From the IMG/VR virus record IMGVR_UViG_3300023174_005338, positions 62,001 through 126,000 of that record: a DNA stretch of 64,000 bases. One strand, 5' to 3'. Below are positions 4,130 through 61,493 of the stretch, one piece after another; positions within the stretch are counted from its first letter, which is position 1; the number at the start of each line of letters is the position of its first letter. Under the pieces are notes generated by a model. The model worked only from the letters and a program-made list of their open reading frames with translations. It ran no database searches and was not told where the DNA came from. Position numbers and translations under genes: made by a program.

Positions 4130-5161
4130 ATGAATACACTAAAGCGTATTGGTTTCTGTTGCAAATGGCTCAATGATCCTAGCGAATGCGGGGGTATGAA
4201 GGTCAATGCCAAAGACCGTGATCTCAACGGACGAAGCACCACCATGCGTTGGTTGCGTGAGCATCCGGCCGAAGCTGAACAGCGCCAGTGGGACATCATG
4301 AATCACAACACCTCAGCCGCGGTCAAGTTGATTGAGCGTGTGGCCACACTACCAGCCAACCGTAGAATGGTTCGTTTGGGTTCGGAAATGTTACAGGGCT
4401 ACACAGAGAAAGATTGGAAAGCCTGGTGGCAACGTCAGGAAATACAAGATCATTGTGAACGTATTTTTGCACCTATTGGAGAAACAGCCCGCAGACTGGA
4501 TGTGCGACTCAGCTTCCACCCTGGACAGTTCTGTGTGTTGGGTTCAGAGTCAGAAGAAATAGTAAATAGAAGCATAGAGGAGTTTGAATATCATGCGGAT
4601 ATGGCCAGATGGATGGGTTATGGGAAATCCTTCCAGGATTTTAAAATCAACGTACACATATCAGGTAAAGCCGGTGCCGCCGGTGCGCGACGTTCGTATG
4701 GACGACTCAGCCCCACAGCCCGCAGTTGTATTACATTTGAAAACGAAGAAATAACACATGGCCTGGATCGTTGTCTTGAACTTGCTGATATTGTGCCTAC
4801 TGTGCTTGATGTTCACCATCACTGGATCAAGACTGGAGAATATATTTCGCCCACAGATGATCGTGTTGCGAGGGTTGTGGACAGTTGGCGTGGTGTTCGT
4901 CCTGCTATGCACTACAGCGTTAGCCGTGAAGACGTACTTGTTGACCATGCCGTTCACCATAAACCAGATCATGCAGTTTTGCTAGAGTCTGGTCACAAGA
5001 AACAAAAACTGCGAGCACATTCAGATTTTTATTGGAACCCGGCAGTCACCGACTGGGCCCTGAGTTTTTGGTCCAAGTTTGACATACAGTGCGAGGCCAA
5101 AGGCAAGAACCTGGCCAGTGAGCAAGTTTACCGTCGTGCGGTAGAACTGGGGTTGGTATGA
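4130..5161 (+). CDS. uvsE: UV damage endonuclease
   Basis: IGFCCK, RLSFHPGQF, INVHISG, ITFENEE, LDVHHHW, RAHSD motifs. Confidence 0.93.
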   Translation: MNTLKRIGFCCKWLNDPSECGGMKVNAKDRDLNGRSTTMRWLREHPAEAEQRQWDIMNHNTSAAVKLIERVATLPANRRMVRLGSEMLQGYTEKDWKAWWQRQEIQDHCERIFAPIGETARRLDVRLSFHPGQFCVLGSESEEIVNRSIEEFEYHADMARWMGYGKSFQDFKINVHISGKAGAAGARRSYGRLSPTARSCITFENEEITHGLDRCLELADIVPTVLDVHHHWIKTGEYISPTDDRVARVVDSWRGVRPAMHYSVSREDVLVDHAVHHKPDHAVLLESGHKKQKLRAHSDFYWNPAVTDWALSFWSKFDIQCEAKGKNLASEQVYRRAVELGLV

Positions 5162-30399: not shown

Positions 30400-31457
30400 A
30401 CAATTACTTAGAAACCATCCGAACCAAGTACGACATCAAGGACTATGTTGAAACGCCTGTGACCATACCTGATTTGCCTACTGAAGGCATTGTGCTGATA
30501 GTAGGAACTTCGGGTTCAGGCAAGAGCACGATCCTGCGCAGACTTGGTCACACCCAAGCCGTGACGTCGAGTCCTTGCAGTACTGTGATAGAAAACTTTT
30601 CTACCCCTGAACGCGGCGAGGAATTACTTCTAGCCGCAGGCTTGCGTAGCATACCCACTTGGTTCCGGCCACCTAATACATTGAGCAATGGTGAATATCA
30701 CAGATTTGAAATGGCCATGGCCATAGATCAAGGTATCCGTTGCATTGACGAATTCACTAGCGTAGTTGACCGCGACACAGCCAAGAGCTTGGCCTACAGT
30801 GTGAGGAAGTATTACAATCAGAATCCTGGTGTGCTATATATTGCCAGTTGCCACAGAGACATAACGGAGTGGTTGGATCCTGACTGGGTCTACGACACAG
30901 ACCTGCAGAAACTTGATAATCGGAGGTCACTTCTTCGACTGGGGACAAGACCAAAACTCACACTCACCATCCGAAGCACAACTCCGGACTATTGGCGATA
31001 TTTCAGTAAATATCATTATCTAGATACCCGGATGAGCCGTAGCGTTCATTGCTATGTGCTGTTGCTAGGTGACAAGCCCATTGGTTTCCATGCTGCAATA
31101 CATTCAACCAATAGAGATATTCACAGTTACTGGCGTGGACACAGGACTGTGATACTGCCTGAGTTTCAAGGCATGGGTATAGGCACTGCGTTCAGTGATG
31201 CCATAGCACAGATCTATGTGGATCGCGGCCTAAGATACTTTAGCAAGACTGCTCATCCAAGTTTTGGTGAACACAGAGAAAAGAGTCCCTTATGGCGGCC
31301 AACCAGTACCAACCGTAAGAGTCGAAAAGGCAGTTATCTGCTCAAGGATGGCTCAATCAGAGCCATGCCCGGCTACGGTGGTAATGCAGAAATCGCTCGA
31401 AGAGATGCAGATCGTGTGTGTTACAGCCACGAATACATTGGCGTCAAGAAGAACTGA
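30396..31457 (+). CDS. ABC-type ATPase fused to GNAT acetyltransferase
   Basis: Walker A GTSGSGKS, signature LSNGE, Walker B IDEFTS, H-loop SCH; C-terminal WRYFSKYHYL...VILPEFQGMGIG. Confidence 0.88.
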   Translation: MNNYLETIRTKYDIKDYVETPVTIPDLPTEGIVLIVGTSGSGKSTILRRLGHTQAVTSSPCSTVIENFSTPERGEELLLAAGLRSIPTWFRPPNTLSNGEYHRFEMAMAIDQGIRCIDEFTSVVDRDTAKSLAYSVRKYYNQNPGVLYIASCHRDITEWLDPDWVYDTDLQKLDNRRSLLRLGTRPKLTLTIRSTTPDYWRYFSKYHYLDTRMSRSVHCYVLLLGDKPIGFHAAIHSTNRDIHSYWRGHRTVILPEFQGMGIGTAFSDAIAQIYVDRGLRYFSKTAHPSFGEHREKSPLWRPTSTNRKSRKGSYLLKDGSIRAMPGYGGNAEIARRDADRVCYSHEYIGVKKN

Positions 31458-31752
31458 GTTCGCATTTTAGAGTTTGATAGTCTTGTATGGTACTGACCGT
31501 TGGTGTGGTCCGAGCATCATAATGGCTTTCCATGGTCTGCCATTCTTCTTCGTCCACAGCTGAAGTCACAATCAATTCATATTCGTGACCATCGGCACTA
31601 TACAATTTTATAGTTTCAAATCCAAATCCGCCTGCGGCAGCGTTTTTGGCCGCTTCAGCAAGACCCTTCAAGGCCTGACGATCTGCTACTATGTAACCGG
31701 TGCCTCGAGGACCGGTGGGTGGATACATGTGTAATCTTCCTGTGGGTTTCAT
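31444..31752 (-). CDS. Hypothetical protein
   Basis: ATGA-coupled to dnaE. Confidence 0.65.
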   Translation of the reverse strand: MKPTGRLHMYPPTGPRGTGYIVADRQALKGLAEAAKNAAAGGFGFETIKLYSADGHEYELIVTSAVDEEEWQTMESHYDARTTPTVSTIQDYQTLKCELSSS

Positions 31753-33422
31753 TGATAGTGTTCTATGTCCTTTAAGTCTAGCTTCTTGTGTTTATACACT
31801 GTAACATATTCTGAATTATTTTTGTACCCCAGTTTGCCCTGACCCCAGAGTATGGGTTGATCATGAAAGCTAGCCGCATGTGGTAGGATTACATCAAGAT
31901 AACGACCATTGCCAGTACCTAGTGTAACAAAGGTTATGTATTTCTTTCGGTCGGATTTGAATACTCTATAGTTGGCTACTAGGCCGCAGAACTCCACAGT
32001 TCCTGGGCCACGTCGTTCTTGACAGGCCGGAATGAATCTTTGACTTGACCAGCGACCGTTGGCACGCAGTTCGGCCACTTCACCACCTTCGGTCACAGCA
32101 GGCACAGCACCAGCCAACTTGGCTTCTTGCCAGTAAACCCAGCGGGCGTAGCTACCTTGGCAGTGCTTGAGAGCCGCACGCCAGAACTGTTCAGGATTGT
32201 GTGCTTTCTGATAGGCCAAGGCCCAGATCAATCGGCCCAGGTTGATGGCATGTGCCCTACACAGTCCGAAATGGCTGAGCTCACGTAGTGCTAAAAATAT
32301 TTCTTCTTTTTTGGGATGGTCTCCTACTAGCACCATGAACTCAAAGATCTTTTCTTCATCCTTTTTGGCAAAGGCTCGCCGCCACATGTCCGCAGTGTAT
32401 TGATCACAACCCAAGATTTCTGAAATCAGCTCTATGGCATCGTCCTCAAACACTATGGTATCTTGCAGTTGATCTGTCGACCAGTCTTGGAACGCTGACG
32501 CACGACGCCGACCCATGGTAGCCACTGGTCTTATAAGTGCTGTGGCCAGCACACAATCACTTCTAGTTCTTGGACGAATGGCCTTGCACAATCGTTTCAT
32601 GGCTGGGCTTTCGGCCTGTGTAACACCCAGCACATTGCCTGAGCTCAACAACTCTGCTGTGGCTTCATCTTCTTCGGGATAGTCCAACAAGTCACGCTGA
32701 TCTATCTCCCACAGTTGACTGAGTCCGCGATTGGCCAAGATATCGATCTTGAAATGTTCAAGATCTTCTATTTCATACTTGTCCAAAAGTATTTGATTGG
32801 TGCCGTTGATTAAACTTTTTGGTACGGCACGATCAAAGATCAGGATACCGCCGCAGTGTTTTGAAATACAACGTTTTTTGCCCATGAGTTTTTGTGTGAG
32901 CCGTTCAGCATCCTCCACATAGTCGGGCACTACTTCTTCAAACCGGAAGTTTCTTTTCAGTGTGCCCTTGGCACCCAGGCGCTTGGCTGCTTCTCTGCGT
33001 GCTGATTTTTCTTTGTACATCACATAGTTGCTTACCCTGGCACTCTGTCCAGGCCAGCGCCGGAATATCCTGTTCATGACTTCTTCCTGTTGCCAGTGCG
33101 GGAAGTCTAGATCGATGTCGGGCAGGTCATCACGTTTGGGATTCATAAAGCGTGACAAGGGTATGCGTTCCTGTATAGGATCCACATCCGAAATGCCCAT
33201 GAGCCAGCATAGCAAACTACTGCCAGCTGATCCTCGAGTGATGTGTGGAATGTCTCGTGTGAGATCCAGGATTTCTCTCACACGCAAAAAATGTCGTGCG
33301 AAATTCAAGTTGGCTATGATTTCTAGTTCTTCTTCAAGCCGTGTTGCGTAAGCTGGATCGTTGGGTAGTTGTCGTGTAAATTTTGAGATTAGTATTTCTA
33401 GTTCGTCATATCTGCTTTTCAT
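31749..33422 (-). CDS. dnaE: Compact DNA polymerase III alpha-like (family C) protein lacking the PHP domain
   Basis: RGSAGSSLL, RFMNPKRDDLPDIDLDF, KHCGGI, FKIDIL, FGLCRAHA, C-terminal OB-like strand set. Confidence 0.9.
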   Translation of the reverse strand: MKSRYDELEILISKFTRQLPNDPAYATRLEEELEIIANLNFARHFLRVREILDLTRDIPHITRGSAGSSLLCWLMGISDVDPIQERIPLSRFMNPKRDDLPDIDLDFPHWQQEEVMNRIFRRWPGQSARVSNYVMYKEKSARREAAKRLGAKGTLKRNFRFEEVVPDYVEDAERLTQKLMGKKRCISKHCGGILIFDRAVPKSLINGTNQILLDKYEIEDLEHFKIDILANRGLSQLWEIDQRDLLDYPEEDEATAELLSSGNVLGVTQAESPAMKRLCKAIRPRTRSDCVLATALIRPVATMGRRRASAFQDWSTDQLQDTIVFEDDAIELISEILGCDQYTADMWRRAFAKKDEEKIFEFMVLVGDHPKKEEIFLALRELSHFGLCRAHAINLGRLIWALAYQKAHNPEQFWRAALKHCQGSYARWVYWQEAKLAGAVPAVTEGGEVAELRANGRWSSQRFIPACQERRGPGTVEFCGLVANYRVFKSDRKKYITFVTLGTGNGRYLDVILPHAASFHDQPILWGQGKLGYKNNSEYVTVYKHKKLDLKDIEHYQ

Positions 33423-33564
33423 GGTTGCCTTACTTGGGTTGCCTTGCCTACATACTTACCGATTCAAATATACCTATAAAAATATATTCGGCAAACTATA
33501 GGCACAATCTATTAAAAAGCACCATATATACTGCTATAATATAGTTTTTTAATAGGAGAATACT

Positions 33565-33696
33565 ATGGAACAATATGTGTGCCAGGTATGTGGTCACGTG
33601 CATGACGAAACCACCGAAGGTGCTTGGGAAGATCTTTCAGACAACTTCATTTGTCCAGAATGTGGTTGTTTCAAAGATGAATATGTTATAATGTAA
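33565..33696 (+). CDS. Rubredoxin
   Basis: Manual translation MEQYVCQVCGHVHD...WEDLSDNFICPECG; AGGAG RBS. Confidence 0.9.
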   Translation: MEQYVCQVCGHVHDETTEGAWEDLSDNFICPECGCFKDEYVIM

Positions 33697-33730
33697 CGTA
33701 GATTTATTTTTTTTTAAAGGAGTAGTAAAA

Positions 33731-34168
33731 ATGGCAAAATCCGTAAAAGGAACCCGTACCGAGAGCAATCTCAAAGAAGCATTTGCTGGTGAGAGCCAAG
33801 CAAACCGTCGTTATTTGTATTTCGCAAACATGGCCGACGTGGCAGGGGCACCAGACGTAGCCGCAGTGTTCCGTAGCACAGCCGAAGGTGAAACAGGACA
33901 TGCCCATGGTCACATGGAATACCTGATCACTGGTGGAGCCGGCGAACCTGGTACCAGCATGCCTGCCAGCACTGTGGCTGAAGCCCTAGAAGCTGCCATC
34001 CACGGCGAAACACATGAGTACAGTGACATGTATCCTGGCATGGCCAAGGAAGCACGTGACGAAGGTTTTGACGAAATCGCTGACTGGTTTGAAACACTAG
34101 CCAAGGCAGAACGCAGCCACGCCAACAAGTTTACCAAGACCTTAGCGGCTCACAAGGCCGAGCAGTAA
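33731..34168 (+). CDS. rbr: Rubrerythrin (ferritin-like domain only)
   Basis: [31 protein letters not shown] di-iron motifs. Confidence 0.93.
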
Positions 34169-34182
34169 TCGGAGGCAGGAGT

Positions 34183-34488
34183 GTGCAAGTAGTCAGCTGG
34201 CACGACTGGTTGGACAGGCACATTCCTTACTACGAGAAGGAACGGCAACAAAATCGTTATTACAACAATCCACCAGCGTCGGTGCTGATAGTCGACCCTG
34301 TGGATCGCAATCGACGTGTAGGCCTGCGTGGTTTTGCCTGGTCAACCTGGGAAGCCATGGATGCGGACATACGAGTTCTGCGCTACAGAGCCGAACCTGT
34401 GTTCCTGGACAATGACACACATCAACGCTGGTATTGGGTGTTCTGGGATGCCAACGAAGCACTAATGGCAGTGATAAGATTGTCATGA
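34183..34488 (+). CDS. Hypothetical protein
   Basis: GGAGG RBS, GTG start. Confidence 0.65.
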   Translation: MQVVSWHDWLDRHIPYYEKERQQNRYYNNPPASVLIVDPVDRNRRVGLRGFAWSTWEAMDADIRVLRYRAEPVFLDNDTHQRWYWVFWDANEALMAVIRLS

Positions 34489-34736
34489 ACATACGATTAC
34501 GATTCGCCTGGTTGCCTACTCAAATGACTAGTGGACAACGCATATGGTTAACACATTACTGGCATCATCAATATCTGTATGATGAAACCACAGGACGGCC
34601 GCCTTTGTGGGGTCGGCACTTTGAGTTTACAGAAACCAAGGCCGAACAAACTTTTCGAGTCTTAAAAGAAAGTGTGTTACATAATCGAAATGTTTGGAAC
34701 GAATACGAACTGACCAAAAAGGATAAAAATGCTTGA
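34485..34736 (+). CDS. Hypothetical protein
   Basis: ATGA-coupled; FAWLPTQM...IWL. Confidence 0.65.
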   Translation: MNIRLRFAWLPTQMTSGQRIWLTHYWHHQYLYDETTGRPPLWGRHFEFTETKAEQTFRVLKESVLHNRNVWNEYELTKKDKNA

Positions 34737-35361
34737 AACAATATGTGAAACACTGGTAGAAGCTTATCGCCGCAACTGGATTACCAGTCGGGATGGCAAC
34801 GTAAGTATTCGTCATCACGATAGAGATCATTTCTACATTACGCCATCCAGTGTACGCAAGCAGACTCTTCAACCAGATCAGTTCAAGAAGATTGGCATCT
34901 TGGACGATGTGTGGAGAGATGGTCCAGAATGGATAGAGTTGCCCTACACTGACATCAGTGCCAATCTAAAACCGTCGGGAGAGATCCCCTTGCATTTTGG
35001 CCTACAGAAACGTATGGGTCAGCACTCGGAAGAAGTGCGTGTAGTGCTCCATGTACATCCTACCTACTCGGTGGCGGCCATGCATGCGGGCATACAGTTA
35101 AATGAGTTGGTGCGAGATTTTCCAGAACTTTCAAGATACACACGAGTGGCCGCCAATGTTCCAGATGTGCCACCAATCAGTCAAGAACTAGCAGATCAAT
35201 GTTTTGAAAAGTTAGAACTGGATGATTTAGGCAACATAGCCTACGACATCGTGGGCATACGAGGACATGGAGTAGTGGCTGTTGATACCAATCCCTGGCG
35301 TGCCTATGAGCATATTGAAAGATTAGAACACATCTGCAAGATAGTGCTGGCCAGCAAATAA
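34729..35361 (+). CDS. Class II aldolase/adducin family protein
   Basis: SRDGNVSIR, PSGEIPLH, VLHVHP, GHGVVAV. Confidence 0.9.
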   Translation: MLETICETLVEAYRRNWITSRDGNVSIRHHDRDHFYITPSSVRKQTLQPDQFKKIGILDDVWRDGPEWIELPYTDISANLKPSGEIPLHFGLQKRMGQHSEEVRVVLHVHPTYSVAAMHAGIQLNELVRDFPELSRYTRVAANVPDVPPISQELADQCFEKLELDDLGNIAYDIVGIRGHGVVAVDTNPWRAYEHIERLEHICKIVLASK

Positions 35362-36591: not shown

Positions 36592-37416
36592 ATGACAGGC
36601 CGCACTTATAGATCAATATTCATTTCAGACGTTCACCTTGGTACCAAGGACTGCAAGGCTGAACAACTCAACAACTTTCTCAAACACCACACCTGTGAAA
36701 CACTTTATCTTGTGGGTGACATCATAGACGCCTGGAAGATACAACAGAACAAATGGCGTTGGAAACAGAGCCATACCAATGTGATCCGTAGAGTGTTGGG
36801 TCATGCCAAACGTGGCACCAGAGTAATCTATGTGGCCGGCAATCATGACGAATTTCTCAGACCACTAATACCCTATGGCATAGGATTTGGCATGGTGGAA
36901 GTGGTCAATCAAACCGAACACATAGGTCTAGACGGACGTCACTACCTGGTCACACACGGGGATCTGTTTGATGGCATCACGAGGATCACACCTTGGCTGA
37001 GTTTCTTGGGTGATAGGCTGTATGATTTTGTGCTGAACCTCAACAGCAGATTCAACTGGCTACGTCATAGGCTGGGCTTTGGTTACTGGAGTTTGAGCAA
37101 GTTCTTGAAATATCGTGTGAAAAAAGCTGTGGACTTTGTGTTCCAGTTTGAACGCAACTTGGCCGCGTACTGCAAGAAGCGTGGGTTTGATGGGGTTATC
37201 TGCGGGCACATACATCATGCAGAAATCCGCGACATAGATGGTGTTGCCTACATGAATGATGGCGACTGGGTGGAATCAATGACTGCCCTGGTTGAACATC
37301 ACGATGGCAGGTGGGAAATAGTTACATGGACCAAGGAGATGGACGATGTGGTTGCTGATGTTGATAGCAGTTCACGTGAACAATCCCCAAGACGTGCCCG
37401 GAAGAGCAAGCATTGA
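36592..37416 (+). CDS. plcP: PlcP-type phospholipase C (LpxH-like metallophosphoesterase)
   Basis: FISDVHLG, VGDIID, GNHDEFLR, HGDLFD, YWSLSKFLKYRVKKAV, GVICGHIH, YMNDGDWVES. Confidence 0.82.
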   Translation: MTGRTYRSIFISDVHLGTKDCKAEQLNNFLKHHTCETLYLVGDIIDAWKIQQNKWRWKQSHTNVIRRVLGHAKRGTRVIYVAGNHDEFLRPLIPYGIGFGMVEVVNQTEHIGLDGRHYLVTHGDLFDGITRITPWLSFLGDRLYDFVLNLNSRFNWLRHRLGFGYWSLSKFLKYRVKKAVDFVFQFERNLAAYCKKRGFDGVICGHIHHAEIRDIDGVAYMNDGDWVESMTALVEHHDGRWEIVTWTKEMDDVVADVDSSSREQSPRRARKSKH

Positions 37417-54488: not shown

Positions 54489-55099
54489 ACGTGCGACTCA
54501 AATACGATCTTGTGTTCACAGCCGGGGTATATCACGACAGCCGCCTGCGCATGAACAACTACAATCTCAGACTGTGGATGATCACCAACTCTGAAGATTA
54601 CACCGATCAAAACACATCATTTGAACGCATCAAGTACTTCATGTACAATCAAATTGACAGTGGTATTTTTATCAACACAGAACACGCCGAGCAGTGTAAA
54701 AAATTTGTAGTCGCTGGACTGAACATCACGACCATGCCAGGAGATCCTACAGACCAATTGGTGGGCATAATGTTATATCACAAACTCAATGCCATCATGG
54801 AAAATCGCATGATCATAGTGGAAACTGAACTGTCCAGTGTCTATGGCGAAAACATGACTTACTTGCACAACGAAAGCGAAAACACCTGGGGCATTGAATC
54901 ACCAGCCTGGTGGAACACTGTTGATCTTGTTCACAGCGACTTTGTGTCCAAAGATTCTGACAACATAGTGTCCATGACCTCTGGTACTACCTGGCGAGAT
55001 TTAGACATGGCCTGGGTCAATAACCCTGATACTAATACTGATGTTGCCACTGGCAACGTCGTATTTGCTGATTTCAAAGCGGATCATGAAGCAAAATAA
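54485..55099 (+). CDS. Hypothetical protein
   Basis: ATGA-coupled 204-aa ORF. Confidence 0.7.
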   Translation: MNVRLKYDLVFTAGVYHDSRLRMNNYNLRLWMITNSEDYTDQNTSFERIKYFMYNQIDSGIFINTEHAEQCKKFVVAGLNITTMPGDPTDQLVGIMLYHKLNAIMENRMIIVETELSSVYGENMTYLHNESENTWGIESPAWWNTVDLVHSDFVSKDSDNIVSMTSGTTWRDLDMAWVNNPDTNTDVATGNVVFADFKADHEAK

Positions 55100-55598
55100 A
55101 TTTGGCGAACTAGTATTCAACCAAACTGATGTGATTGATCTGATCATGCAAGGACAAGATTTGACTGTGCTGGATGGCATGATCGTGGACGATTCTGTGG
55201 ACCTGCATCACTGGCCAGAATTTTTATCAACTGTGCCTAAATTACAGCAACAACAGTCTCGCACCTGTTCAGTCGAAGAATTCCACACACAGCAACAACA
55301 AAATTGGCACATGCCCGAATCATACAAGCACATGGACATAGCCGCACATGTATTGGGTCTGTGTACCGGCGAGGCCGAATTGCAACGCTGTGGTCAAGAA
55401 TTATTGCTGTACCAAGAACGTGACCTGTTTGATCTGTTGAAGTATCTCAAGTATCTAGTAGATGTCATGCAAGAGCATGCAATCATATGGGGAGTTGGCC
55501 GCGGCAGCAGCGTGGCCAGTCATGTGTTGTACAAGCTGGGAGTGCATAGGATCGACAGTTTGTATTATAATTTAGACATCAGCGAATTCTTGCGTTAA
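55086..55598 (+). CDS. N-terminal fragment of a split DNA polymerase III alpha subunit
   Basis: RCGQELLLY...YLVDVM...WGVGRGSSVASHVLYKLGVHRID..YNLDISEFLR; ends just before the PDxD catalytic motif. Confidence 0.85.
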   Translation: MKQNKFGELVFNQTDVIDLIMQGQDLTVLDGMIVDDSVDLHHWPEFLSTVPKLQQQQSRTCSVEEFHTQQQQNWHMPESYKHMDIAAHVLGLCTGEAELQRCGQELLLYQERDLFDLLKYLKYLVDVMQEHAIIWGVGRGSSVASHVLYKLGVHRIDSLYYNLDISEFLR

Positions 55599-56118: not shown

Positions 56119-56517
56119 ATGAAATCAGCATTTGCACCACATCAAATCACTCAACAACAAATCAAGGCTTTGCACGACAACGTCATAGTGTCAGATATGG
56201 AGTTTGACACACGCATCACACAAAGCGGTCTTATACTGCCCAACGACAACGGTACTACCTTGGGCATACGTCCCAGATGGGGTCGTGTGTATGCAGTAGG
56301 CCGGGATCAACAGGATGTCAAAGTAGGACAGTGGATCTTGGTGGCACACGGTCGTTGGACTCGTGGCATCGACATCGAAGACGGACAACAGGACCACAAG
56401 CGCACCATACGAAAAATTGATCCCGATGATATTCTGCTGATTGCCGACGGTGATCAACGTCCACAAGATGATACCATGAGCACAGCGATACATGTGCAGA
56501 AACAGACAAGAGAATAA
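56119..56517 (+). CDS. groES: Co-chaperonin GroES-like protein
   Basis: IKALHDNVIV...TQSGLILP...GRVYAVG...VKVGQWIL. Confidence 0.88.
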   Translation: MKSAFAPHQITQQQIKALHDNVIVSDMEFDTRITQSGLILPNDNGTTLGIRPRWGRVYAVGRDQQDVKVGQWILVAHGRWTRGIDIEDGQQDHKRTIRKIDPDDILLIADGDQRPQDDTMSTAIHVQKQTRE

Positions 56518-57446: not shown

Positions 57447-57629
57447 ATGGCACTAACCAAACCAACCCGAACACAACTACCACAATCGCGACTGCGCAAA
57501 GTTGCTGCATTCAGTAAAAACGCCATCAGGCTTGTGGCCTTTGGCTTCCTGGCCTATTATGAAATACAAGCAGCCGCGGTATTGTTGGTCGTGGCCGAAC
57601 TGATTGCTGTTGCGGAACAGGCTTCATGA
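57447..57629 (+). CDS. Small membrane protein
   Basis: AAGGAG RBS; promoter TTGACT-N17-TATAAT (57389-57417). Confidence 0.65.
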   Translation: MALTKPTRTQLPQSRLRKVAAFSKNAIRLVAFGFLAYYEIQAAAVLLVVAELIAVAEQAS

Positions 57630-58546
57630 AAGAACTTTGGGTAGAAAAATATCGGCCCACCACAGTGGATGGTTATGTGTTTGTGGACGTTGCTCAACGC
57701 GAACAGGTTCAGAGCTGGATACGGGATAAAAGCATACCACACCTGTTGTTTTCGGGCAGTCCCGGCACCGGCAAGACCACCTTGGCCAAGATGCTGATCA
57801 ACGAGCTGGGCATTGATGAATACGATGTGATGTGGGCCAATGGATCTAAAGAAGCCAGAAAAATCGAGTGGGTGGACAAACTGATCAGCTTTTGTCAGAC
57901 CATGCCATTTGGTGCATTCAAGGTTGTCCTGATTGACGAGGCCGACTACATGAATCCACAAAGTGTGCAACCGGCCCTGCGTAATCTCATGGAAGACTAC
58001 AGTGATCATGTGAGATTCATCCTGACCTGTAACTATCCCAACAAAATCATTCCGCCCATACACAGTCGTTGCCAACAACTGCACATAGTCAAAACAGATC
58101 AAGTGGAATTCACTGCCCGAGTGGCCACTGTGCTGGTCACAGAACAAGTGCAATTTGACATTGATACTCTTGACAGTTATGTGCGAGCCACTTATCCAGA
58201 TCTGCGCAAGTGCTTGAACCTAGTTCAACAAAACAGCACCACAGGGCAACTGCTGGCACCCAGCTCGGCAGACAAAGCCGCAGGAGACTGGAAACTGGAC
58301 TGTGTGCAACTGTTCAAAGATGGCCGTATTCGTGAAGCTAGAACATTGATTTGTCAATCAAGCACTCCAGAAGAAGCTGACGACGTATTCCGTTGGATGT
58401 ACGACAACTTGGATTTATGGGCCCAGGATCCAGAACGGCAGGATCAGGCCATCATAATCATACGCAACGGTCTGGTCAATGTGCCCATGGTGGCAGATCA
58501 GGAAATCAATCTCAGCGCAACTCTTTGTGAGCTATGTCAACTGTAA
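57626..58546 (+). CDS. Sliding-clamp loader subunit (T4 gp44 / RFC small subunit-like)
   Basis: WVEKYRP, GSPGTGKTT, IDEAD, FILTCNY, SRC motif. Confidence 0.93.
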   Translation: MKELWVEKYRPTTVDGYVFVDVAQREQVQSWIRDKSIPHLLFSGSPGTGKTTLAKMLINELGIDEYDVMWANGSKEARKIEWVDKLISFCQTMPFGAFKVVLIDEADYMNPQSVQPALRNLMEDYSDHVRFILTCNYPNKIIPPIHSRCQQLHIVKTDQVEFTARVATVLVTEQVQFDIDTLDSYVRATYPDLRKCLNLVQQNSTTGQLLAPSSADKAAGDWKLDCVQLFKDGRIREARTLICQSSTPEEADDVFRWMYDNLDLWAQDPERQDQAIIIIRNGLVNVPMVADQEINLSATLCELCQL

Positions 58547-59673
58547 CAACATCACAATTTGATACCCTAGAACCTGCTATAGATCCCAACAACCGGATCA
58601 CATTCCTGCTGGATTGGGAACTGACCATGAAATGCAATTTAGATTGCAGTTATTGTGGAACAGGTATCTATTTCGGACATGACAATACTACTCGGCACCC
58701 ATCTTTGGACAAATGTTTGGATGCCTTGGATTTTATGTTTCTCTACGTGGATTTGTATATGCGTACAAAACCTCCGGGTCTGCGCTATGTTGTATTAAAT
58801 GTGTATGGTGGCGAAAGTCTACATCATCCAGACATTGTTGAAATTTTACGTCAGGTTAGACATCGACATCAGCACTATGCTGATCGTTGGAGACTGACAG
58901 TAACCACCACCACCAATGCTATAGTATCCAACAAAAAACTTCGGCAAATCATACCCTTGATTGATGAATTTAGTGTGAGTTATCACACTGAAAATACAGC
59001 CAAACAAAAACAACAATTCAAAGACAATCTACTGACCATTGCCGGCTCTGGCGTACAACAAAAATGTGTGGTACTCATGCATCAACAACCGGAGCTTTTT
59101 CAAGATGCTGTGGACATGATTGACTGGTTGACTCATAACAATATCCGAGTATTACCAAGACAATTAGATGCTAATGAAGGTTTAGATGGTCTTAGAATTT
59201 ACAAACAAAATCAGGTGAAATGGTTCAGTAAACTCTACAAAAACAAAACATTTGGTGAGTCGATGGAGTTGTTGGATGGCAACACCGACTCCAACTTGAC
59301 CGATGTGGGCCGAGCCTGCTGTGGAGGACGGCAAATCTGTGCCGATCAAAATTACAAACAAAGACACTTTTATGTGGGAAACAAATTTCCCGACTGGTAT
59401 TGCAGCGTGAATCATTTTTTTCTTTATGTCAAACAGGTCAACGGAGAAGTTTTTGTCAACAAAGATTGTAAAATGAATTTTGATGGCAAGGTTGGCCCCA
59501 TTGGCAATCTCAGCGACACTCAACAGATTTTGTCTACGCTTCGTGACCAACTTGACACAGATTCCATGCCCGTAATACAATGTAAAAAATACAACTGTTT
59601 TTGTGGTCTGTGCGCTCCCAAAGCCAAAGATTTATCAACTTATCATTCTATCATGGAAAAATATCACATATGA
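58534..59673 (+). CDS. Radical SAM protein
   Basis: CNLDCSYC, YGGESL, TTNA, SYHTE; C-terminal Cys cluster CKKYNCFCGLC. Confidence 0.9.
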   Translation: MSTVTTSQFDTLEPAIDPNNRITFLLDWELTMKCNLDCSYCGTGIYFGHDNTTRHPSLDKCLDALDFMFLYVDLYMRTKPPGLRYVVLNVYGGESLHHPDIVEILRQVRHRHQHYADRWRLTVTTTTNAIVSNKKLRQIIPLIDEFSVSYHTENTAKQKQQFKDNLLTIAGSGVQQKCVVLMHQQPELFQDAVDMIDWLTHNNIRVLPRQLDANEGLDGLRIYKQNQVKWFSKLYKNKTFGESMELLDGNTDSNLTDVGRACCGGRQICADQNYKQRHFYVGNKFPDWYCSVNHFFLYVKQVNGEVFVNKDCKMNFDGKVGPIGNLSDTQQILSTLRDQLDTDSMPVIQCKKYNCFCGLCAPKAKDLSTYHSIMEKYHI

Positions 59674-59954
59674 GATACCTATTATTGACCTACTATACCA
59701 GGCCGTCGGGCAAAATTGACGAAGTTATGACCATCTCAAAAAGACTCAAGACTAGAGATTGGCAAATGACCAATGTGATCTTGGATTTCAAAGAGTGCCG
59801 GGTACTGACCTGTAGTGTGGCCGGTGTAACTGCCAACAAAGACTGGGACACCATAGTCGGATACTATTACAAACACTATGCTGCCACCATTGAACGCCTG
59901 TTCCAAGAAAACGGACACGAACTACCAAAGGCTGAGCCAGAGACTGCTGCTTGA
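59670..59954 (+). CDS. Hypothetical protein
   Basis: ATGA-coupled; MRYLLLTYY... Confidence 0.7.
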   Translation: MRYLLLTYYTRPSGKIDEVMTISKRLKTRDWQMTNVILDFKECRVLTCSVAGVTANKDWDTIVGYYYKHYAATIERLFQENGHELPKAEPETAA

Positions 59955-59985
59955 CACAAAATGCATTTGGTAGTATAATAAAGTT

Positions 59986-60591
59986 ATGAAATGGAAAAAT
60001 CTGGATCGCTTGATACTCACAGACTGTGATGGCGTGTGCCTGGACTGGGAATGGGCATTCAATGTATGGATGCAGGAACATGGCTTTGAAGAAGTTCCTG
60101 GCAGCAAACTACAGTATGACATGAGCCTGCGATATGGAGTCAGCAAGGATCAGATCCGTAAGTTGATCAAGGTGTTCAACGAGAGTGCCGCCATTGGCTT
60201 TTTGCCTGCCATGCGTGATGCCATGTACTATGTCAAGCGACTGCACGAGGAACATGGATTCAGATTCCATGCCATAACCAGTCTTAGTCTGGATCCCAAT
60301 GCGCAGAAACTGCGTGAGATGAACATACACAAGTTATTTGGGCCCACGGCCTTTGAGCGAATTGTATGCCTAGACACCGGAGCTCACAAAGACGAAGCCC
60401 TGGAAGAATATGAAGGCACCGGTTGTTACTGGATCGAGGACAAGCCTGACAATGCCGAGGCCGGGTATCGAGCAGGATTGAAATGTTTGCTGTTAGAGCA
60501 CGGCCATAACATGCATCACTACCATGAAGATATAAACCTGGTAAAAAACTGGAAGGAGATTTACCAGGTCATCACAGGTCAATACGTGTAG
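59986..60591 (+). CDS. HAD-superfamily hydrolase (5'-deoxyribonucleotidase-like)
   Basis: LTDCDGV (DxD), WIEDKPDN; promoter TTGACA-N17-TATAAT (59951-59979). Confidence 0.88.
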   Translation: MKWKNLDRLILTDCDGVCLDWEWAFNVWMQEHGFEEVPGSKLQYDMSLRYGVSKDQIRKLIKVFNESAAIGFLPAMRDAMYYVKRLHEEHGFRFHAITSLSLDPNAQKLREMNIHKLFGPTAFERIVCLDTGAHKDEALEEYEGTGCYWIEDKPDNAEAGYRAGLKCLLLEHGHNMHHYHEDINLVKNWKEIYQVITGQYV

Positions 60592-61316
60592 AGTCGTAAT
60601 ACACTGCCAATAATGGCATGTCGCTGTACATCGCGAGCTTGTAACTCGCACACAGCTATTCCGTCAACACCCCCTTTCCCCAGCCGTTGACTCAGGTCCA
60701 TGAGACCATTGTCGCCGTGACTGCGATCGGCTTGTTCAATGTCACCCGTTATAATGATTTTTGAATCCACACCTATGCGTGTCATCAACATCTTACATTG
60801 GGCTGGCGTGGCATTTTGCATTTCATCTGCAATGATCCAGCTACGCTTGAACGTTCGACCCCGCATGAAAGCCAAGGGGGCTATTTCTATGACCTGATCC
60901 TCAATCATCGCACTGATGTCTTGAGGGCGGTAACTCTCGCGCAGTACGTCTAACAAGGGGCGAGTCCATGGTTCCATTTTTGCCACAAGATTGCCCGGCA
61001 GGAATCCGTGCCGTTCATTTTCTACTCCCACTGCAGGTCGTGTCATTACTATGCGTTCTGTGGTTCCTTCTTGAAGAGCTCGTACAGCGGCCTGCATGGC
61101 CAAGTAAGTTTTACCTGTGCCAGCGGGTCCTACTGTGACAACAATGTGTTGAGAACTATCCTGCAAGGCCAAGACCAGGCGTTCTTGATTTCTTGTGCGT
61201 GGCACAAGTTCAATGGCGCGAGGGCGGTACTGCTTGGGTTGGGCTTGGCTAAACTGGATGGTGTTCTCGACTTGTTGCATACGCTTTTGTGCTTTTTGTG
61301 CGCGATTTCTACTCAA
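60579..61316 (-). CDS. phoH: PhoH-like ATPase
   Basis: GPAGTGKTYLA, TRPAV, GFLPG, LAFMRGRTF, DEMQN, GDIEQAD; TTG start at 61316 with GGAG RBS. Confidence 0.95.
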   Translation of the reverse strand: MSRNRAQKAQKRMQQVENTIQFSQAQPKQYRPRAIELVPRTRNQERLVLALQDSSQHIVVTVGPAGTGKTYLAMQAAVRALQEGTTERIVMTRPAVGVENERHGFLPGNLVAKMEPWTRPLLDVLRESYRPQDISAMIEDQVIEIAPLAFMRGRTFKRSWIIADEMQNATPAQCKMLMTRIGVDSKIIITGDIEQADRSHGDNGLMDLSQRLGKGGVDGIAVCELQARDVQRHAIIGSVLRLYTY

Positions 61317-61493
61317 GTGCGATTCTCCGTTTTGGTTAAATTGTACTTCAACAGTGATTACTGTCACAGGTATTTAGGTTGTAATTTTAAAAAATAGTAT
61401 GGGTACTGATATTTGAAAAAATTATGCTAAGTATTAAGCTACACTCAAAATCCTTCAAATCTGCCGCACAACAAAATCACCATAAATAAAAAC

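What the first reader, a model, noticed from the sequence alone, without database searches (positions are those of the whole stretch)
31749..33422. Miniature family-C polymerase (557 aa DnaE without PHP domain)
Seen: the RGS motif is only about 60 aa from the N-terminus. The catalytic PDIDLDF and KIDIL acids are intact, the fingers are shortened and an OB-like C-terminus is retained. This is about half the length of bacterial DnaE. It is convergent on the nuclease/ABC-GNAT operon and lies in the same genome as uvsE and a second DnaE fragment. Inference: a non-proofreading accessory polymerase for lesion bypass, repair or copying modified DNA rather than the replicase.
Basis: partly seen in the sequence, partly recalled or inferred. 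Interest (0 to 1): 0.6.

Follow-up and report, generated by a model that had tools for sequence, protein, structure and literature searches.

The report
Half-size bacterial-type polymerase in giant phage
A 337-kb freshwater phage carries an intact, strongly conserved half-length version of the bacterial replicative DNA polymerase that lacks the domains for proofreading, clamp binding and tau binding. It belongs to a large family found almost only in viruses, usually sits beside the phage helicase and primase genes, and accompanies an ordinary proofreading polymerase.

Summary
Window 31749-33422 (-) is an intact 557-aa ORF with the Pol III alpha palm and finger domains, the RGS motif at residues 63-65, the three catalytic Asp residues and a C-terminal OB fold. 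It has no PHP domain, no beta-binding domain and no tau-binding tail. The AlphaFold model (pLDDT 90) superposes on DnaE structures from just after PHP to the end of the OB fold (Z 25-35). The whole 337-kb jumbo-phage genome has no PHP or DnaQ match, but it does have an intact proofreading family-B polymerase. So "accessory, non-proofreading" is supported.

The lesion-bypass role is not specifically supported. In 52 of 54 related loci (50-65% identity) the gene lies within 3 kb of a DnaB-like helicase, mostly with a DnaG-like primase. In a nested clade it is fused to an SF2 helicase. I favour a helicase-coupled second polymerase at the fork or in recombination-dependent synthesis.

The protein belongs to a diverse PHP-less clade that is nearly virus-only and separate from canonical DnaEs (support 100). 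The "second DnaE fragment" is the N-terminal unit of the split minimal Pol III alpha described by Iyer et al. 2021, and its C-terminal unit lies elsewhere in the genome. I rate this a new variant of a known kind, of moderate interest.

The parts
31749..33422 (-). mini-DnaE coding sequence (557 aa, P0001): palm, reduced thumb, core fingers and OB fold. It has no PHP domain, no beta-binding domain and no tau-binding tail.
   Evidence: ORF and translation. Pfam PF07733 and PF17657. AF2 model with pLDDT 89.8 and pTM 0.88. VIA-align Z 35.3 to Mtb DnaE1 313-843, Z 33.3 to Taq 300-1122 and Z 25.8 to E. coli 285-1073.
33228..33236 (-). RGS motif (R63-G64-S65), the nucleotide-binding motif of the Pol-beta-like palm.
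   Evidence: Translation check. Invariant in alignment A1. Aligned to RGS in Taq and E. coli.
33102..33122 (-). PDIDLDF (residues 101-107). D104 and D106 are the first two catalytic aspartates.
   Evidence: Translation. Aligned to Taq D463/D465 and to E. coli PDFDVDF. P101, D102, D104 and D106 are invariant.
32736..32750 (-). KIDIL (residues 225-229). D227 is the third catalytic aspartate.
   Evidence: Translation. Aligned to Taq KMDFL (D618) and E. coli KFDFL. K225 and D227 are invariant.
32247..32693 (-). Core fingers (residues about 244-392). They carry RP (298-299), the RR pair (348-349) that aligns with E. coli RRAMGKK, and the C-x-x-H motif (388-391) that aligns with E. coli KSH.
   Evidence: PF17657 match. 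HMMER alignments. R298, P299, R348, C388 and H391 are invariant. Residue check.
31779..32021 (-). C-terminal OB fold (residues 468-548).
   Evidence: AF2 beta-barrel. Foldseek and VIA-align matches to SSB/PriB with Z about 8 and rmsd about 2.1 A over about 77 residues. The whole-model alignment to DnaE runs through the DnaE OB fold.
31444..31752 (-). orf102 (P0273, 102 aa), which overlaps the mini-DnaE stop codon by ATGA. It is conserved downstream of the gene in the closest clade. Its function is unknown.
   Evidence: The junction sequence shows the ATGA overlap. It is present in 16 of 19 loci at 75% identity or more. The alignment has invariant R6, H8, P15, D54, G55, H56, Y58, E70, W71 and Q72. 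No Pfam or PHROG hit and no fold match (best Z 4.0).
33423..33730 (.). 308-bp divergent intergenic region between the mini-DnaE gene and the rubrerythrin gene. It is the presumed promoter region.
   Evidence: ORF map. There is one sigma-70-like match on the - strand at 33494-33467, which is no more than shuffled sequence gives.
55041..55598 (+). The 'second DnaE fragment' is the N-terminal (RGS-bearing) unit of a split minimal Pol III alpha (P0121). The likely true start is the ATG at 55086. It is a separate system and not part of the mini-DnaE gene.
   Evidence: PF07733 positions 29-94 match residues 119-184. hhalign to P0001 residues 24-93. The protein ends just before the DxD strand. It fits the description in PMC7824862. 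The partner C-terminal unit lies outside the window at G000:C1:17469-18053 (P0272).
36592..37416 (+). Calcineurin-like metallophosphoesterase. In five related loci it lies downstream of mini-DnaE and orf102, directly after orf102 in two of them (L015, L021). The association is only contextual.
   Evidence: PF00149. Weak PHROG metallophosphoesterase / DNA repair exonuclease hits. Synteny in L011, L013, L015, L020 and L021.

Best explanation
The ORF encodes a catalytically competent, compact family-C (DnaE-type) DNA polymerase. It consists only of the palm, a trimmed thumb, the core fingers and an OB fold.

Three modules that tie bacterial DnaE to its holoenzyme are missing:
- the PHP domain, which proofreads or docks epsilon;
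- the beta-clamp-binding (HhH)2 domain;
- the tau-binding tail.

It is a second, non-proofreading polymerase of a T4-style jumbo phage whose main replicase is a proofreading, clamp-tailed family-B polymerase.

Most likely (inferred) it works coupled to a helicase, in one of two ways. It may act at the fork with the phage DnaB-like helicase and DnaG-like primase, for example extending primers or synthesising one strand before hand-off to PolB. Or it may act in recombination-dependent or strand-displacement synthesis. The OB fold would hold the single-stranded template.

Shown: the architecture, the intact and conserved active site, purifying selection, the absence of PHP and DnaQ from the genome, the presence of PolB, and the synteny and fusion pattern.
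Inferred: activity, the partners and the step of DNA synthesis it performs.
For: - Architecture and active site.
- The family is conserved and under purifying selection: more than 1200 homologues, and dN/dS about 0.1 with dS saturated.
- No PHP, no RNase_T/DnaQ and no family-A polymerase in the complete, terminally repeated 337-kb genome.
- An intact PolB with an exonuclease domain, DINSLYP, KKINLNSLYG, YGDTD and a hydrophobic C-terminal tail.
- A second complete relative genome, LR756508.1 (484 kb), also has PolB and no PHP.
- Synteny: in the 50-65% identity clade a DnaB homologue lies within 3 kb in 52 of 54 loci (21 upstream on the same strand, 31 convergent). A primase is present in 39 loci and the split Pol III C-terminal unit in 29.
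- Fusion: 20 of the 150 best cluster representatives carry an N-terminal SF2 helicase (ResIII/DEAD plus Helicase_C) in place of PHP. They form one nested clade.
- Iyer et al. [quoted passage not shown]
Against: - There is no biochemical or expression evidence. No RNA run holds the sequence.
- In this genome and its closest clade (75% identity or more) the gene has moved away from the DnaB-primase module, which lies at G000:C1:13-23 kb. Here it sits among auxiliary-metabolism-like genes.
- Adjacency is convergent rather than co-transcribed in 31 of 52 loci.
- The fused helicase is only generically similar to the phage's own UvsW-like helicase.
- No clamp-binding motif was found, so processive fork synthesis would need another tether.
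- A helicase-polymerase fusion next to UDG in one giant-virus-like contig fits repair as well as replication.
Confidence: 0.55

Rival explanations
1. One reading: a dedicated lesion-bypass, repair-synthesis or modified-DNA polymerase. One example would be filling gaps after UvdE incision. Another would be copying templates that the proofreading PolB handles poorly.
For: - No proofreading domain in cis or in trans.
- UvdE lies in the same window at 4130-5161, and its homologue lies 8 kb from the gene in L015.
- The best NCBIfam model is the DnaE2 'error-prone' subfamily.
- A metallophosphoesterase with weak 'DNA repair exonuclease' PHROG similarity follows the gene in five relatives.
- UDG is adjacent to a helicase-fused relative.
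- Glycosyltransferase and methyltransferase genes lie nearby.
Against: - The DnaE2 hit scores 165 bits against a cut-off of 939, and the DnaE1 and other models score nearly as well.
- No ImuA/ImuB-like genes were seen among the neighbours scanned.
- The dominant synteny is with the replicative helicase and primase.
- Nothing tested here shows that the phage DNA is modified.
Confidence: 0.28
2. It is the main replicative polymerase of the phage, and the family-B enzyme plays the auxiliary role.
For: - It is adjacent to DnaB and primase in relatives.
- PF07733 is reported as the signature gene of the largest marine jumbo-phage cluster, PGC_A (PMC9123017).
Against: - It has no proofreading, no clamp-binding domain or motif and no tau-like tether.
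- PolB is intact, with an exonuclease domain and a clamp-tail-like C-terminus, and an RFC-like clamp loader is present.
- Group 2 jumbo phages are described as PolB-replicating.
Confidence: 0.1
3. It is a degenerate or non-catalytic remnant of a captured DnaE, for example a DNA-binding or regulatory protein.
For: About half of the ancestral protein has been lost, and there are no expression data.
Against: - All catalytic and dNTP-binding residues are invariant across relatives down to 31% identity.
- Purifying selection is strong.
- The family is large and diverse.
- The predicted fold is confident and DnaE-like.
Confidence: 0.04

Closest known systems
Split minimal Pol III alpha of group 2.2 jumbo phages (Iyer, Anantharaman, Krishnan, Burroughs and Aravind 2021, Viruses 13:63; PMC7824862)
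   Same: It is phage-specific and lacks PHP, as this protein does. It is a family-C catalytic module that accompanies a family-B replicase in T4-style jumbo phages. The same genome carries it: the N-terminal unit at window 55041-55598 and the C-terminal unit at G000:C1:17469-18053. C-terminal unit homologues occur in 96 cultured jumbo phages, including PA5oct, Atu_ph07 and CBB.
   Different: The mini-DnaE is one contiguous 557-aa chain. It keeps a thumb remnant, the full core fingers and an OB fold. It is much closer to bacterial DnaE than the split units are, which match it only weakly in profile comparisons (hhalign E about 1e-5). No cultured phage in the collection has a close copy: the best full-length hit is an uncultured 484-kb phage at 36.5% identity.
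Bacterial DnaE1 (Pol III alpha; PDB 2HNH, 5FKU, 2HPI, 3E0D, 5LEW, 7PU7)
   Same: It shares the Pol-beta-like palm with three aspartates, the RGS motif, the fingers motifs (RP, RRAxxKK, KSH-like) and the OB fold. Structural Z is 25-35 and the family profile scores E 2.5e-65 against E. coli alpha.
   Different: PHP (E. coli 1 to about 285), the distal fingers plus the beta-binding domain, and the tau-binding tail (E. coli 1074-1160) are all absent. It scores far below every NCBIfam DnaE cut-off. It forms a separate clade from the PHP-bearing DnaEs.
DnaE2 / ImuC error-prone polymerase
   Same: Both are accessory family-C polymerases without proofreading. NF004225 is the top NCBIfam model for this protein.
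   Different: DnaE2 keeps a (degenerate) PHP domain and is full length, and it works with ImuA/ImuB and the beta clamp (established knowledge). This protein scores 165 bits against a cut-off of 939. No imuA/imuB-like neighbours were seen.
DnaE3 in PolC-plus-DnaE3 bacteria (functional analogy only)
   Same: It is a second family-C polymerase working beside the main proofreading replicase, thought to extend primers before hand-off (established knowledge, also summarised in PMC12926913).
   Different: DnaE3 is full length with PHP and clamp binding. In this phage the partner replicase is family B, not PolC. The analogy is untested.
Full-length phage DnaE-like polymerases (phrog_405; Streptomyces, Mycobacterium, Bacillus and Pseudomonas phages; Iyer group 3.2)
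   Same: They share the same Pfam domains and are phage-encoded.
   Different: They carry the N-terminal PHP domain and are the sole replicase of their phages. Identity to the mini-DnaE is 27% or less.
SF2-helicase::mini-DnaE fusion proteins (uncharacterised metagenomic proteins such as P0147 and P0159)
   Same: The polymerase module is the same PHP-less type at 38-41% identity, and the fusions nest inside the same clade.
   Different: They carry about 400 aa of ResIII/DEAD plus Helicase_C at the N-terminus. They are encoded on contigs with eukaryote-virus-like gene content.

Membership tests
Family C DNA polymerase catalytic core (Pol III alpha, PF07733 + PF17657) | Pol-beta-like nucleotidyltransferase palm with the RGS motif and three catalytic aspartates | tested here: met
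   PF07733 at E 1.5e-38, above its gathering score. R63-G64-S65, D104, D106 and D227 align to the catalytic residues of Taq and E. coli and are invariant in the family.
Family C DNA polymerase catalytic core (Pol III alpha, PF07733 + PF17657) | Fingers domain with the conserved dNTP-binding motifs | tested here: met
   PF17657 at E 1.9e-14. RP 298-299, RR 348-349 and H391 are conserved. The structural alignment covers the fingers.
Canonical DnaE1/DnaE2/DnaE3/PolC groups | N-terminal PHP domain, active or degenerate | tested here: not met
   No PHP hit in the protein. The model starts at the residue equivalent to E. coli 285 and Taq 300. No PF02811 match anywhere in the genome at E of 1 or less, while 14 of 14 control genomes gave a hit.
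Canonical DnaE1/DnaE2/DnaE3/PolC groups | Beta-clamp-binding domain or motif | tested here: not met
   The sequence alignment ends at residue 419 (E. coli 788), and only about 48 residues precede the OB fold. There is no QLxLF, QxxLF, PIP-type or T4-tail-type motif. A non-canonical tether cannot be excluded.
Canonical DnaE1/DnaE2/DnaE3/PolC groups | Curated NCBIfam equivalog or subfamily score | tested here: not met
   The best scores are NF004225 at 165 bits (cut-off 939), TIGR00594 at 134.5 (cut-off 434) and NF004226 at 124 (cut-off 1002).
Canonical DnaE1 (replicase) | OB fold followed by a tau-binding C-terminal domain | tested here: inconclusive
   The OB fold is present at residues 468-548. 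The protein ends 9 residues after it, so the tau-binding domain is absent. The feature is half met.
DnaE2 / ImuC mutasome | Genetic linkage to imuA/imuB-like genes | tested here: not met
   The neighbours in the window that were scanned gave no such hits, and none was recognised among the gene matches in the 80 related loci. There was no dedicated genome-wide ImuA/ImuB search.
Split minimal Pol III alpha of jumbo phages (Iyer et al. 2021) | Catalytic module split into separate N-terminal and C-terminal proteins encoded by distant genes | tested here: not met
   P0001 is contiguous. The split pair exists separately in the same genome.
Split minimal Pol III alpha of jumbo phages (Iyer et al. 2021) | PHP-less family-C module co-occurring with a family-B replicase in a jumbo phage | tested here: met
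   PolB is present and PHP is absent in this genome and in LR756508.1.
PHP-less viral mini-DnaE clade (defined here) | Monophyly against PHP-bearing DnaEs, a length of about 540-650 aa, and near-exclusive occurrence in viral sequence | tested here: met
   - Tree support: FastTree on 124 rows gives SH-like 100. IQ-TREE on 50 rows gives SH-aLRT 100.
- Composition: of the 150 best cluster representatives, 55 are minis, 20 helicase fusions, 12 carry a small N-terminal extension and 41 carry PHP.
- Distribution: in species genomes of bacteria and archaea only two loci carry it. One of them is plainly a phage contig.

The most novel reading that the evidence does not exclude
The mini-DnaE defines a virus-borne lineage of family-C polymerases that never needs PHP, a clamp or tau. 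It would serve as a helicase-coupled second polymerase in replisomes built on PolB. The lineage would span jumbo phages, where the gene stands alone beside DnaB and primase, and giant viruses of eukaryotes, where it is fused to an SF2 helicase. That would be a viral counterpart of the PolC/DnaE3 or Pol alpha/delta division of labour, and the first family-C polymerases outside bacteria and their phages. It might also approximate the ancestral minimal form of Pol III alpha.
Probability: 0.2. Interest if true: 0.8.

Novelty: new variant of a known kind. Interest (0 to 1): 0.55.

Why it matters
PHP is treated as a universal part of family-C polymerases. The recent survey of bacterial polymerases classifies all four groups using PHP plus the polymerase domain (PMC12926913). 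A natural, conserved 557-aa enzyme without PHP, a clamp-binding domain or a tau tail would show which parts of DnaE are needed for catalysis and folding. It would be the smallest contiguous DnaE-type polymerase available for structural and enzymological work or for use as a tool.

It also sharpens an open question raised by Iyer et al. 2021: why do PolB-replicating jumbo phages keep Pol III-derived modules? This genome keeps two different ones, a split form and a contiguous form.

The helicase fusions and the DnaB/primase synteny give directly testable partners. The fusions on giant-virus-like contigs, if confirmed, would contradict the view that family-C polymerases are confined to bacteriophages among viruses (PMC4889955).

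Tried and rejected
- Complex prediction of mini-DnaE with orf102, using alignments A1 and A2, scored 0.00 and gave no verdict. It is not evidence either way.
- orf102 gave no Pfam or PHROG hit. The Atlas offered only a weak Imm32 lead at 0.89. Its AF2 model (pLDDT 79) has no convincing fold match, with best Z 4.0.
- I looked for an orthologue of the fused helicase in this genome by BLASTP and by a 5-sequence HMM and found none. Direct comparison with the phage's UvsW-like helicase showed only generic SF2 motifs. I dropped the idea of a specific Rosetta-stone link to UvsW. Both helicases fall in the broad phrog_16.
- Pfam searches of the genome for a beta clamp (PF00712), the T4 gp45 clamp (PF02916), DnaQ (PF00929), PHP (PF02811) and a family-A polymerase (PF00476) were all negative. 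The clamp was therefore not identified, and clamp binding could not be tested.
- I used NCBIfam to place the protein in DnaE1 or DnaE2. All scores are below the cut-offs. The nearest cellular DnaEs found by motif scan (Gemmatimonadota, Nitrospinota, Acidobacteriota and others) pass only the superfamily model, so they give no labelled DnaE1/DnaE2 anchor. A tree with labelled DnaE1/2/3/PolC sequences was therefore not built.
- Expression: no RNA run holds the sequence. It is present only in freshwater DNA metagenomes, from 11 studies.
- An NCLDV capsid search on the fusion-bearing contigs was not possible because those records are not held.
The first IQ-TREE run timed out, and I replaced it with FastTree and a 50-row IQ-TREE run.
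- The promoter and terminator scan around the gene found nothing beyond what shuffled sequence gives.
Full report
**What is there.** The window is bases 62001-126000 of a 337,119-bp virus record with direct terminal repeats, that is, a complete jumbo-phage genome. Its DNA is found in freshwater and lake metagenomes from 11 studies. At 31749-33422 on the minus strand there is an uninterrupted 557-codon ORF. Pfam finds the Pol III alpha 'NTPase' (palm/thumb) domain at residues 21-230 (E 1.5e-38) and the finger domain at 243-360 (E 1.9e-14), and nothing else. PHROGs aligns residues 20-424 to positions 359-828 of the 1190-position phage DnaE family, so the protein begins where the PHP domain of its full-length relatives ends. 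RGS is at residues 63-65, PDIDLDF at 101-107 and KIDIL at 225-229. They align with the catalytic residues of Thermus aquaticus (D463, D465, D618) and E. coli Pol III alpha.

**Structure.** I built an alignment of 36 family members at 31-93% identity (A1). With it AlphaFold2 gives a confident model (pLDDT 89.8, pTM 0.88), ending in a beta-barrel at residues 468-548. Foldseek and VIA-align place the model on every solved DnaE:
- M. tuberculosis DnaE1: Z 35.3, model 1-450 on chain 313-843.
- Taq ternary complex: Z 33.3, model 1-552 on chain 300-1122, 510 residues aligned.
- E. coli alpha: Z 25.8, model 1-548 on chain 285-1073.
- PolC: Z about 29.

The barrel alone matches SSB and PriB OB folds (Z about 8, rmsd about 2.1 A). 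The protein therefore covers exactly the stretch from the end of PHP to the end of the OB fold. It does so in about 550 residues where Taq uses about 820. The thumb is about 20 residues shorter. The segment that in E. coli runs from 789 to about 1000 is reduced to about 48 residues (420-467). By my recollection of the published domain limits, that E. coli segment is the distal fingers plus the beta-binding (HhH)2 domain. The tau-binding tail is absent. No clamp-binding motif of the usual bacterial, PIP or T4-tail kinds is present.

**Is it a working gene?** Several results say yes.
- R63, G64, S65, P101, D102, D104, D106, K225, D227, R298, P299, R348, C388 and H391 are invariant across A1.
- The family consensus reproduces the E. 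coli motifs ALFRPG, ADMLRRAMGKKK and GFNKSHSAAYA.
- More than 1200 homologues, nearly all 554-558 aa among those listed, are in the 90%-clustered protein collection.
- Against relatives at 75-83% amino-acid identity, dN is 0.15-0.24 while dS is saturated. Where dS can be computed, dN/dS is 0.08-0.13.

A decayed remnant is therefore very unlikely.

**What else the genome has.**
- There is no PHP domain anywhere (E of 1 or less, with controls positive in 14 of 14 genomes).
- There is no DnaQ/RNase_T domain and no family-A polymerase.
- An 885-aa family-B polymerase lies at G000:C1:161994-164651. It has an exonuclease domain, Exo I DIE, motif A DINSLYP, motif B KKINLNSLYG, motif C YGDTD and a hydrophobic C-terminal tail.
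- An RFC-like clamp-loader ATPase is at window 57626-58546.
- The clamp itself was not recognised by Pfam.

The only other complete genome with a relative, the uncultured 484-kb phage LR756508.1 (36.5% identity over 97% of the protein), likewise has PolB and no PHP.

**The family.** An exhaustive HMMER search of 1.84 billion cluster representatives gives 477 hits below 1e-30. I classified the best 150 with HMMs built here:
- 55 are stand-alone proteins of about 480-700 aa.
- 12 carry short N-terminal extensions with no PHP or helicase match.
- 20 carry an N-terminal SF2 helicase.
- 41 are canonical PHP-bearing DnaEs, which appear only from E of about 1e-50 downwards.
- 22 are fragments or other forms.

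Pfam confirms ResIII/DEAD/SWI2_SNF2 plus Helicase_C in the long relatives and no PHP. One of them also carries an intein.

Two trees separate the PHP-less proteins from the PHP-bearing ones. FastTree on 124 rows gives local support of 100. IQ-TREE (LG+G4) on 50 rows gives SH-aLRT 100. The helicase fusions form one nested clade with support 99. For the IQ-TREE run I left out one long-branch row (P0214) and two probable truncated canonical proteins (P0212, P0263), and I subsampled the remaining rows at random.

The clade is essentially viral. A scan of one genome for each of 185,579 bacterial and archaeal species found only two true members. One is a 'Legionellales' MAG contig that is plainly a phage fragment with the same DnaB-primase neighbours. 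Every other hit is a full-length DnaE at 31% identity or less. Those cellular hits pass only the TIGR00594 superfamily cut-off. P0001 itself is below every NCBIfam cut-off, and its best hit is the DnaE2 subfamily at 165 against 939 bits.

**Context and function.** In this window the gene is convergent with a plus-strand gene run whose last member has weak P-loop/ABC and GNAT hits. It is divergent from a rubrerythrin gene. Its stop codon overlaps by ATGA the start of a conserved 102-aa ORF of unknown function.

Eighty related viral loci tell more.
- In the 54 loci at 50-65% identity, a DnaB-like helicase lies within 3 kb in 52 loci. In 21 it is upstream on the same strand and in 31 it is convergent.
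- A DnaG-like primase is present in 39 of those loci and the split Pol III C-terminal unit in 29. A UvsW-like SF2 helicase is present in 9, wherever the flank reaches far enough.
- Pfam and PHROGs confirm the identities of these genes in this genome, where the module sits at G000:C1:13-23 kb.
- In the 19 loci at 75% identity or more (this phage's own lineage) the gene has moved. It is followed by orf102 in 16 loci, a calcineurin-like metallophosphoesterase lies nearby in 5, and PolB lies within 10 kb in 3.

Two independent lines therefore tie this polymerase module to DNA unwinding: adjacency to the replicative helicase and primase, and a fusion to an SF2 helicase. For that reason I favour a helicase-coupled second polymerase working beside PolB, either at the fork or in recombination-dependent or strand-displacement synthesis. 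This is an inference. Iyer et al. proposed the same general idea for minimal Pol III modules.

The repair and lesion-bypass reading remains a serious rival. UvdE is in the window at 4130-5161. UDG is adjacent to one fusion. The enzyme has no proofreading. On the other side, no mutasome partners were seen among the scanned neighbours, and the DnaE2 similarity is not specific.

**The 'second DnaE fragment'.** Window 55041-55598 (likely start 55086) matches PF07733 positions 29-94. By profile comparison it corresponds to residues 24-93 of the mini-DnaE, and it ends just before the DxD strand. A 194-aa protein at G000:C1:17469-18053 starts with SADIDIDL and carries FKIDLL, IIRPG and FKQSH. It aligns to residues 189-302. 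Together they are the 'split minimal DNA polymerase III alpha' that Iyer et al. 2021 described in group 2.2 jumbo phages, which replicate with PolB. The C-terminal unit has homologues in 96 cultured jumbo phages, such as PA5oct, Atu_ph07 and CBB. That places this phage in the same broad group. The genome thus holds three polymerase systems: PolB, the split minimal Pol III and the contiguous mini-DnaE.

**Known or new?**
- JGI already labels family members 'DNA polymerase III alpha subunit' or 'error-prone DNA polymerase'.
- PF07733 has been noted as the signature of the largest marine jumbo-phage cluster (PMC9123017).
- Minimal PHP-less Pol III modules in jumbo phages were described in split form (PMC7824862).
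- I found no description of the contiguous form (palm, thumb, fingers and OB fold), of its clade, or of the helicase fusions. Full-text searches for the relevant phrases returned nothing. The library is incomplete, so this is absence of evidence only.

I classify it as a new variant of a known kind.

**Limits.**
- There is no biochemical or expression evidence.
- The clamp was not identified.
- The complex prediction with orf102 gave no verdict.
- The giant-virus nature of the fusion-bearing contigs rests on gene content alone.
- No tree with curated DnaE1/2/3/PolC anchors was built.

Noticed in passing
window 55041-55598 (+), and G000:C1:17469-18053 (outside the window; L090:5469-6053): This genome carries both units of the split minimal Pol III alpha (Iyer et al. 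2021) as well as the contiguous mini-DnaE and PolB. That makes three polymerase systems in one phage. The C-terminal unit keeps DIDID, KIDLL, RPG and KQSH motifs within 194 aa.
   Followed up: partly
L091/L092 (JGI 3300007609 and ENA ERZ27257077 contigs), L176 (GCA_006365055.1 contig VFQS010000164.1), L093, L178: SF2-helicase::mini-DnaE fusion proteins (about 930-1180 aa, no PHP) sit on contigs with eukaryote-virus-like genes. These include viral-type rhodopsin, eIF-1A, RING and AN1 zinc fingers, HMG boxes, PI-PLC and an aquaporin. In L176 and L177 a UDG gene is adjacent. One fusion (P0179) has an intein in its helicase part. If these contigs are giant viruses, family-C polymerases are not confined to bacteriophages among viruses.
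   Followed up: partly
window 31444-31752 (-): orf102 is a conserved small protein with invariant R6, H8, D54-G55-H56, Y58 and E70-W71-Q72. It is translationally coupled to the mini-DnaE gene. It evolves much faster than the polymerase (34-44% against 75-84% identity). It has no family or fold match.
   Followed up: yes
window 36592-37416 (+): A calcineurin-like metallophosphoesterase, 77-81% identical in relatives, lies downstream of mini-DnaE and orf102 in five related loci, directly after orf102 in L015 and L021. PolD and eukaryotic B-family polymerases use this fold as an exonuclease subunit, so a trans-acting nuclease partner is conceivable. This was not tested.
   Followed up: no
window 4130-5161 (+): A UV-damage endonuclease (UvdE, PF03851, E 5.9e-29) is encoded by the phage. 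Its homologue lies 8 kb from the mini-DnaE gene in L015.
   Followed up: partly
L095 (PBLX01000009.1, 'Legionellales bacterium' MAG): A 42-kb contig binned into a bacterial MAG carries mini-DnaE (59% identity), DnaB (64%) and primase (43%) in phage order. It is either a mis-binned jumbo-phage fragment or a hint about the host.
   Followed up: partly
L097-L174 (Gemmatimonadota, Nitrospinota, Acidobacteriota, Spirochaetota and FCPU426 MAGs): The nearest cellular relatives by motif are DnaE proteins of about 1000-1090 aa. The nine sampled reach neither the DnaE1 nor the DnaE2 NCBIfam cut-off and pass only the superfamily model. They may be an unclassified DnaE paralogue group.
   Followed up: no
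window 33731-35361, 56119-56517, 58534-61367: Host-metabolism-like genes surround the replication genes: rubrerythrin, a class II aldolase, Cpn10/GroES, a radical SAM protein, a weak NT5C-like 5'-nucleotidase hit and PhoH.
   Followed up: no
LR756508.1 positions 260623-266900 (W01): In the 484-kb relative the family-B polymerase matches are spread over two open frames (1022 and 625 aa) about 4 kb apart. This suggests a split or intein- or intron-interrupted PolB.
   Followed up: no
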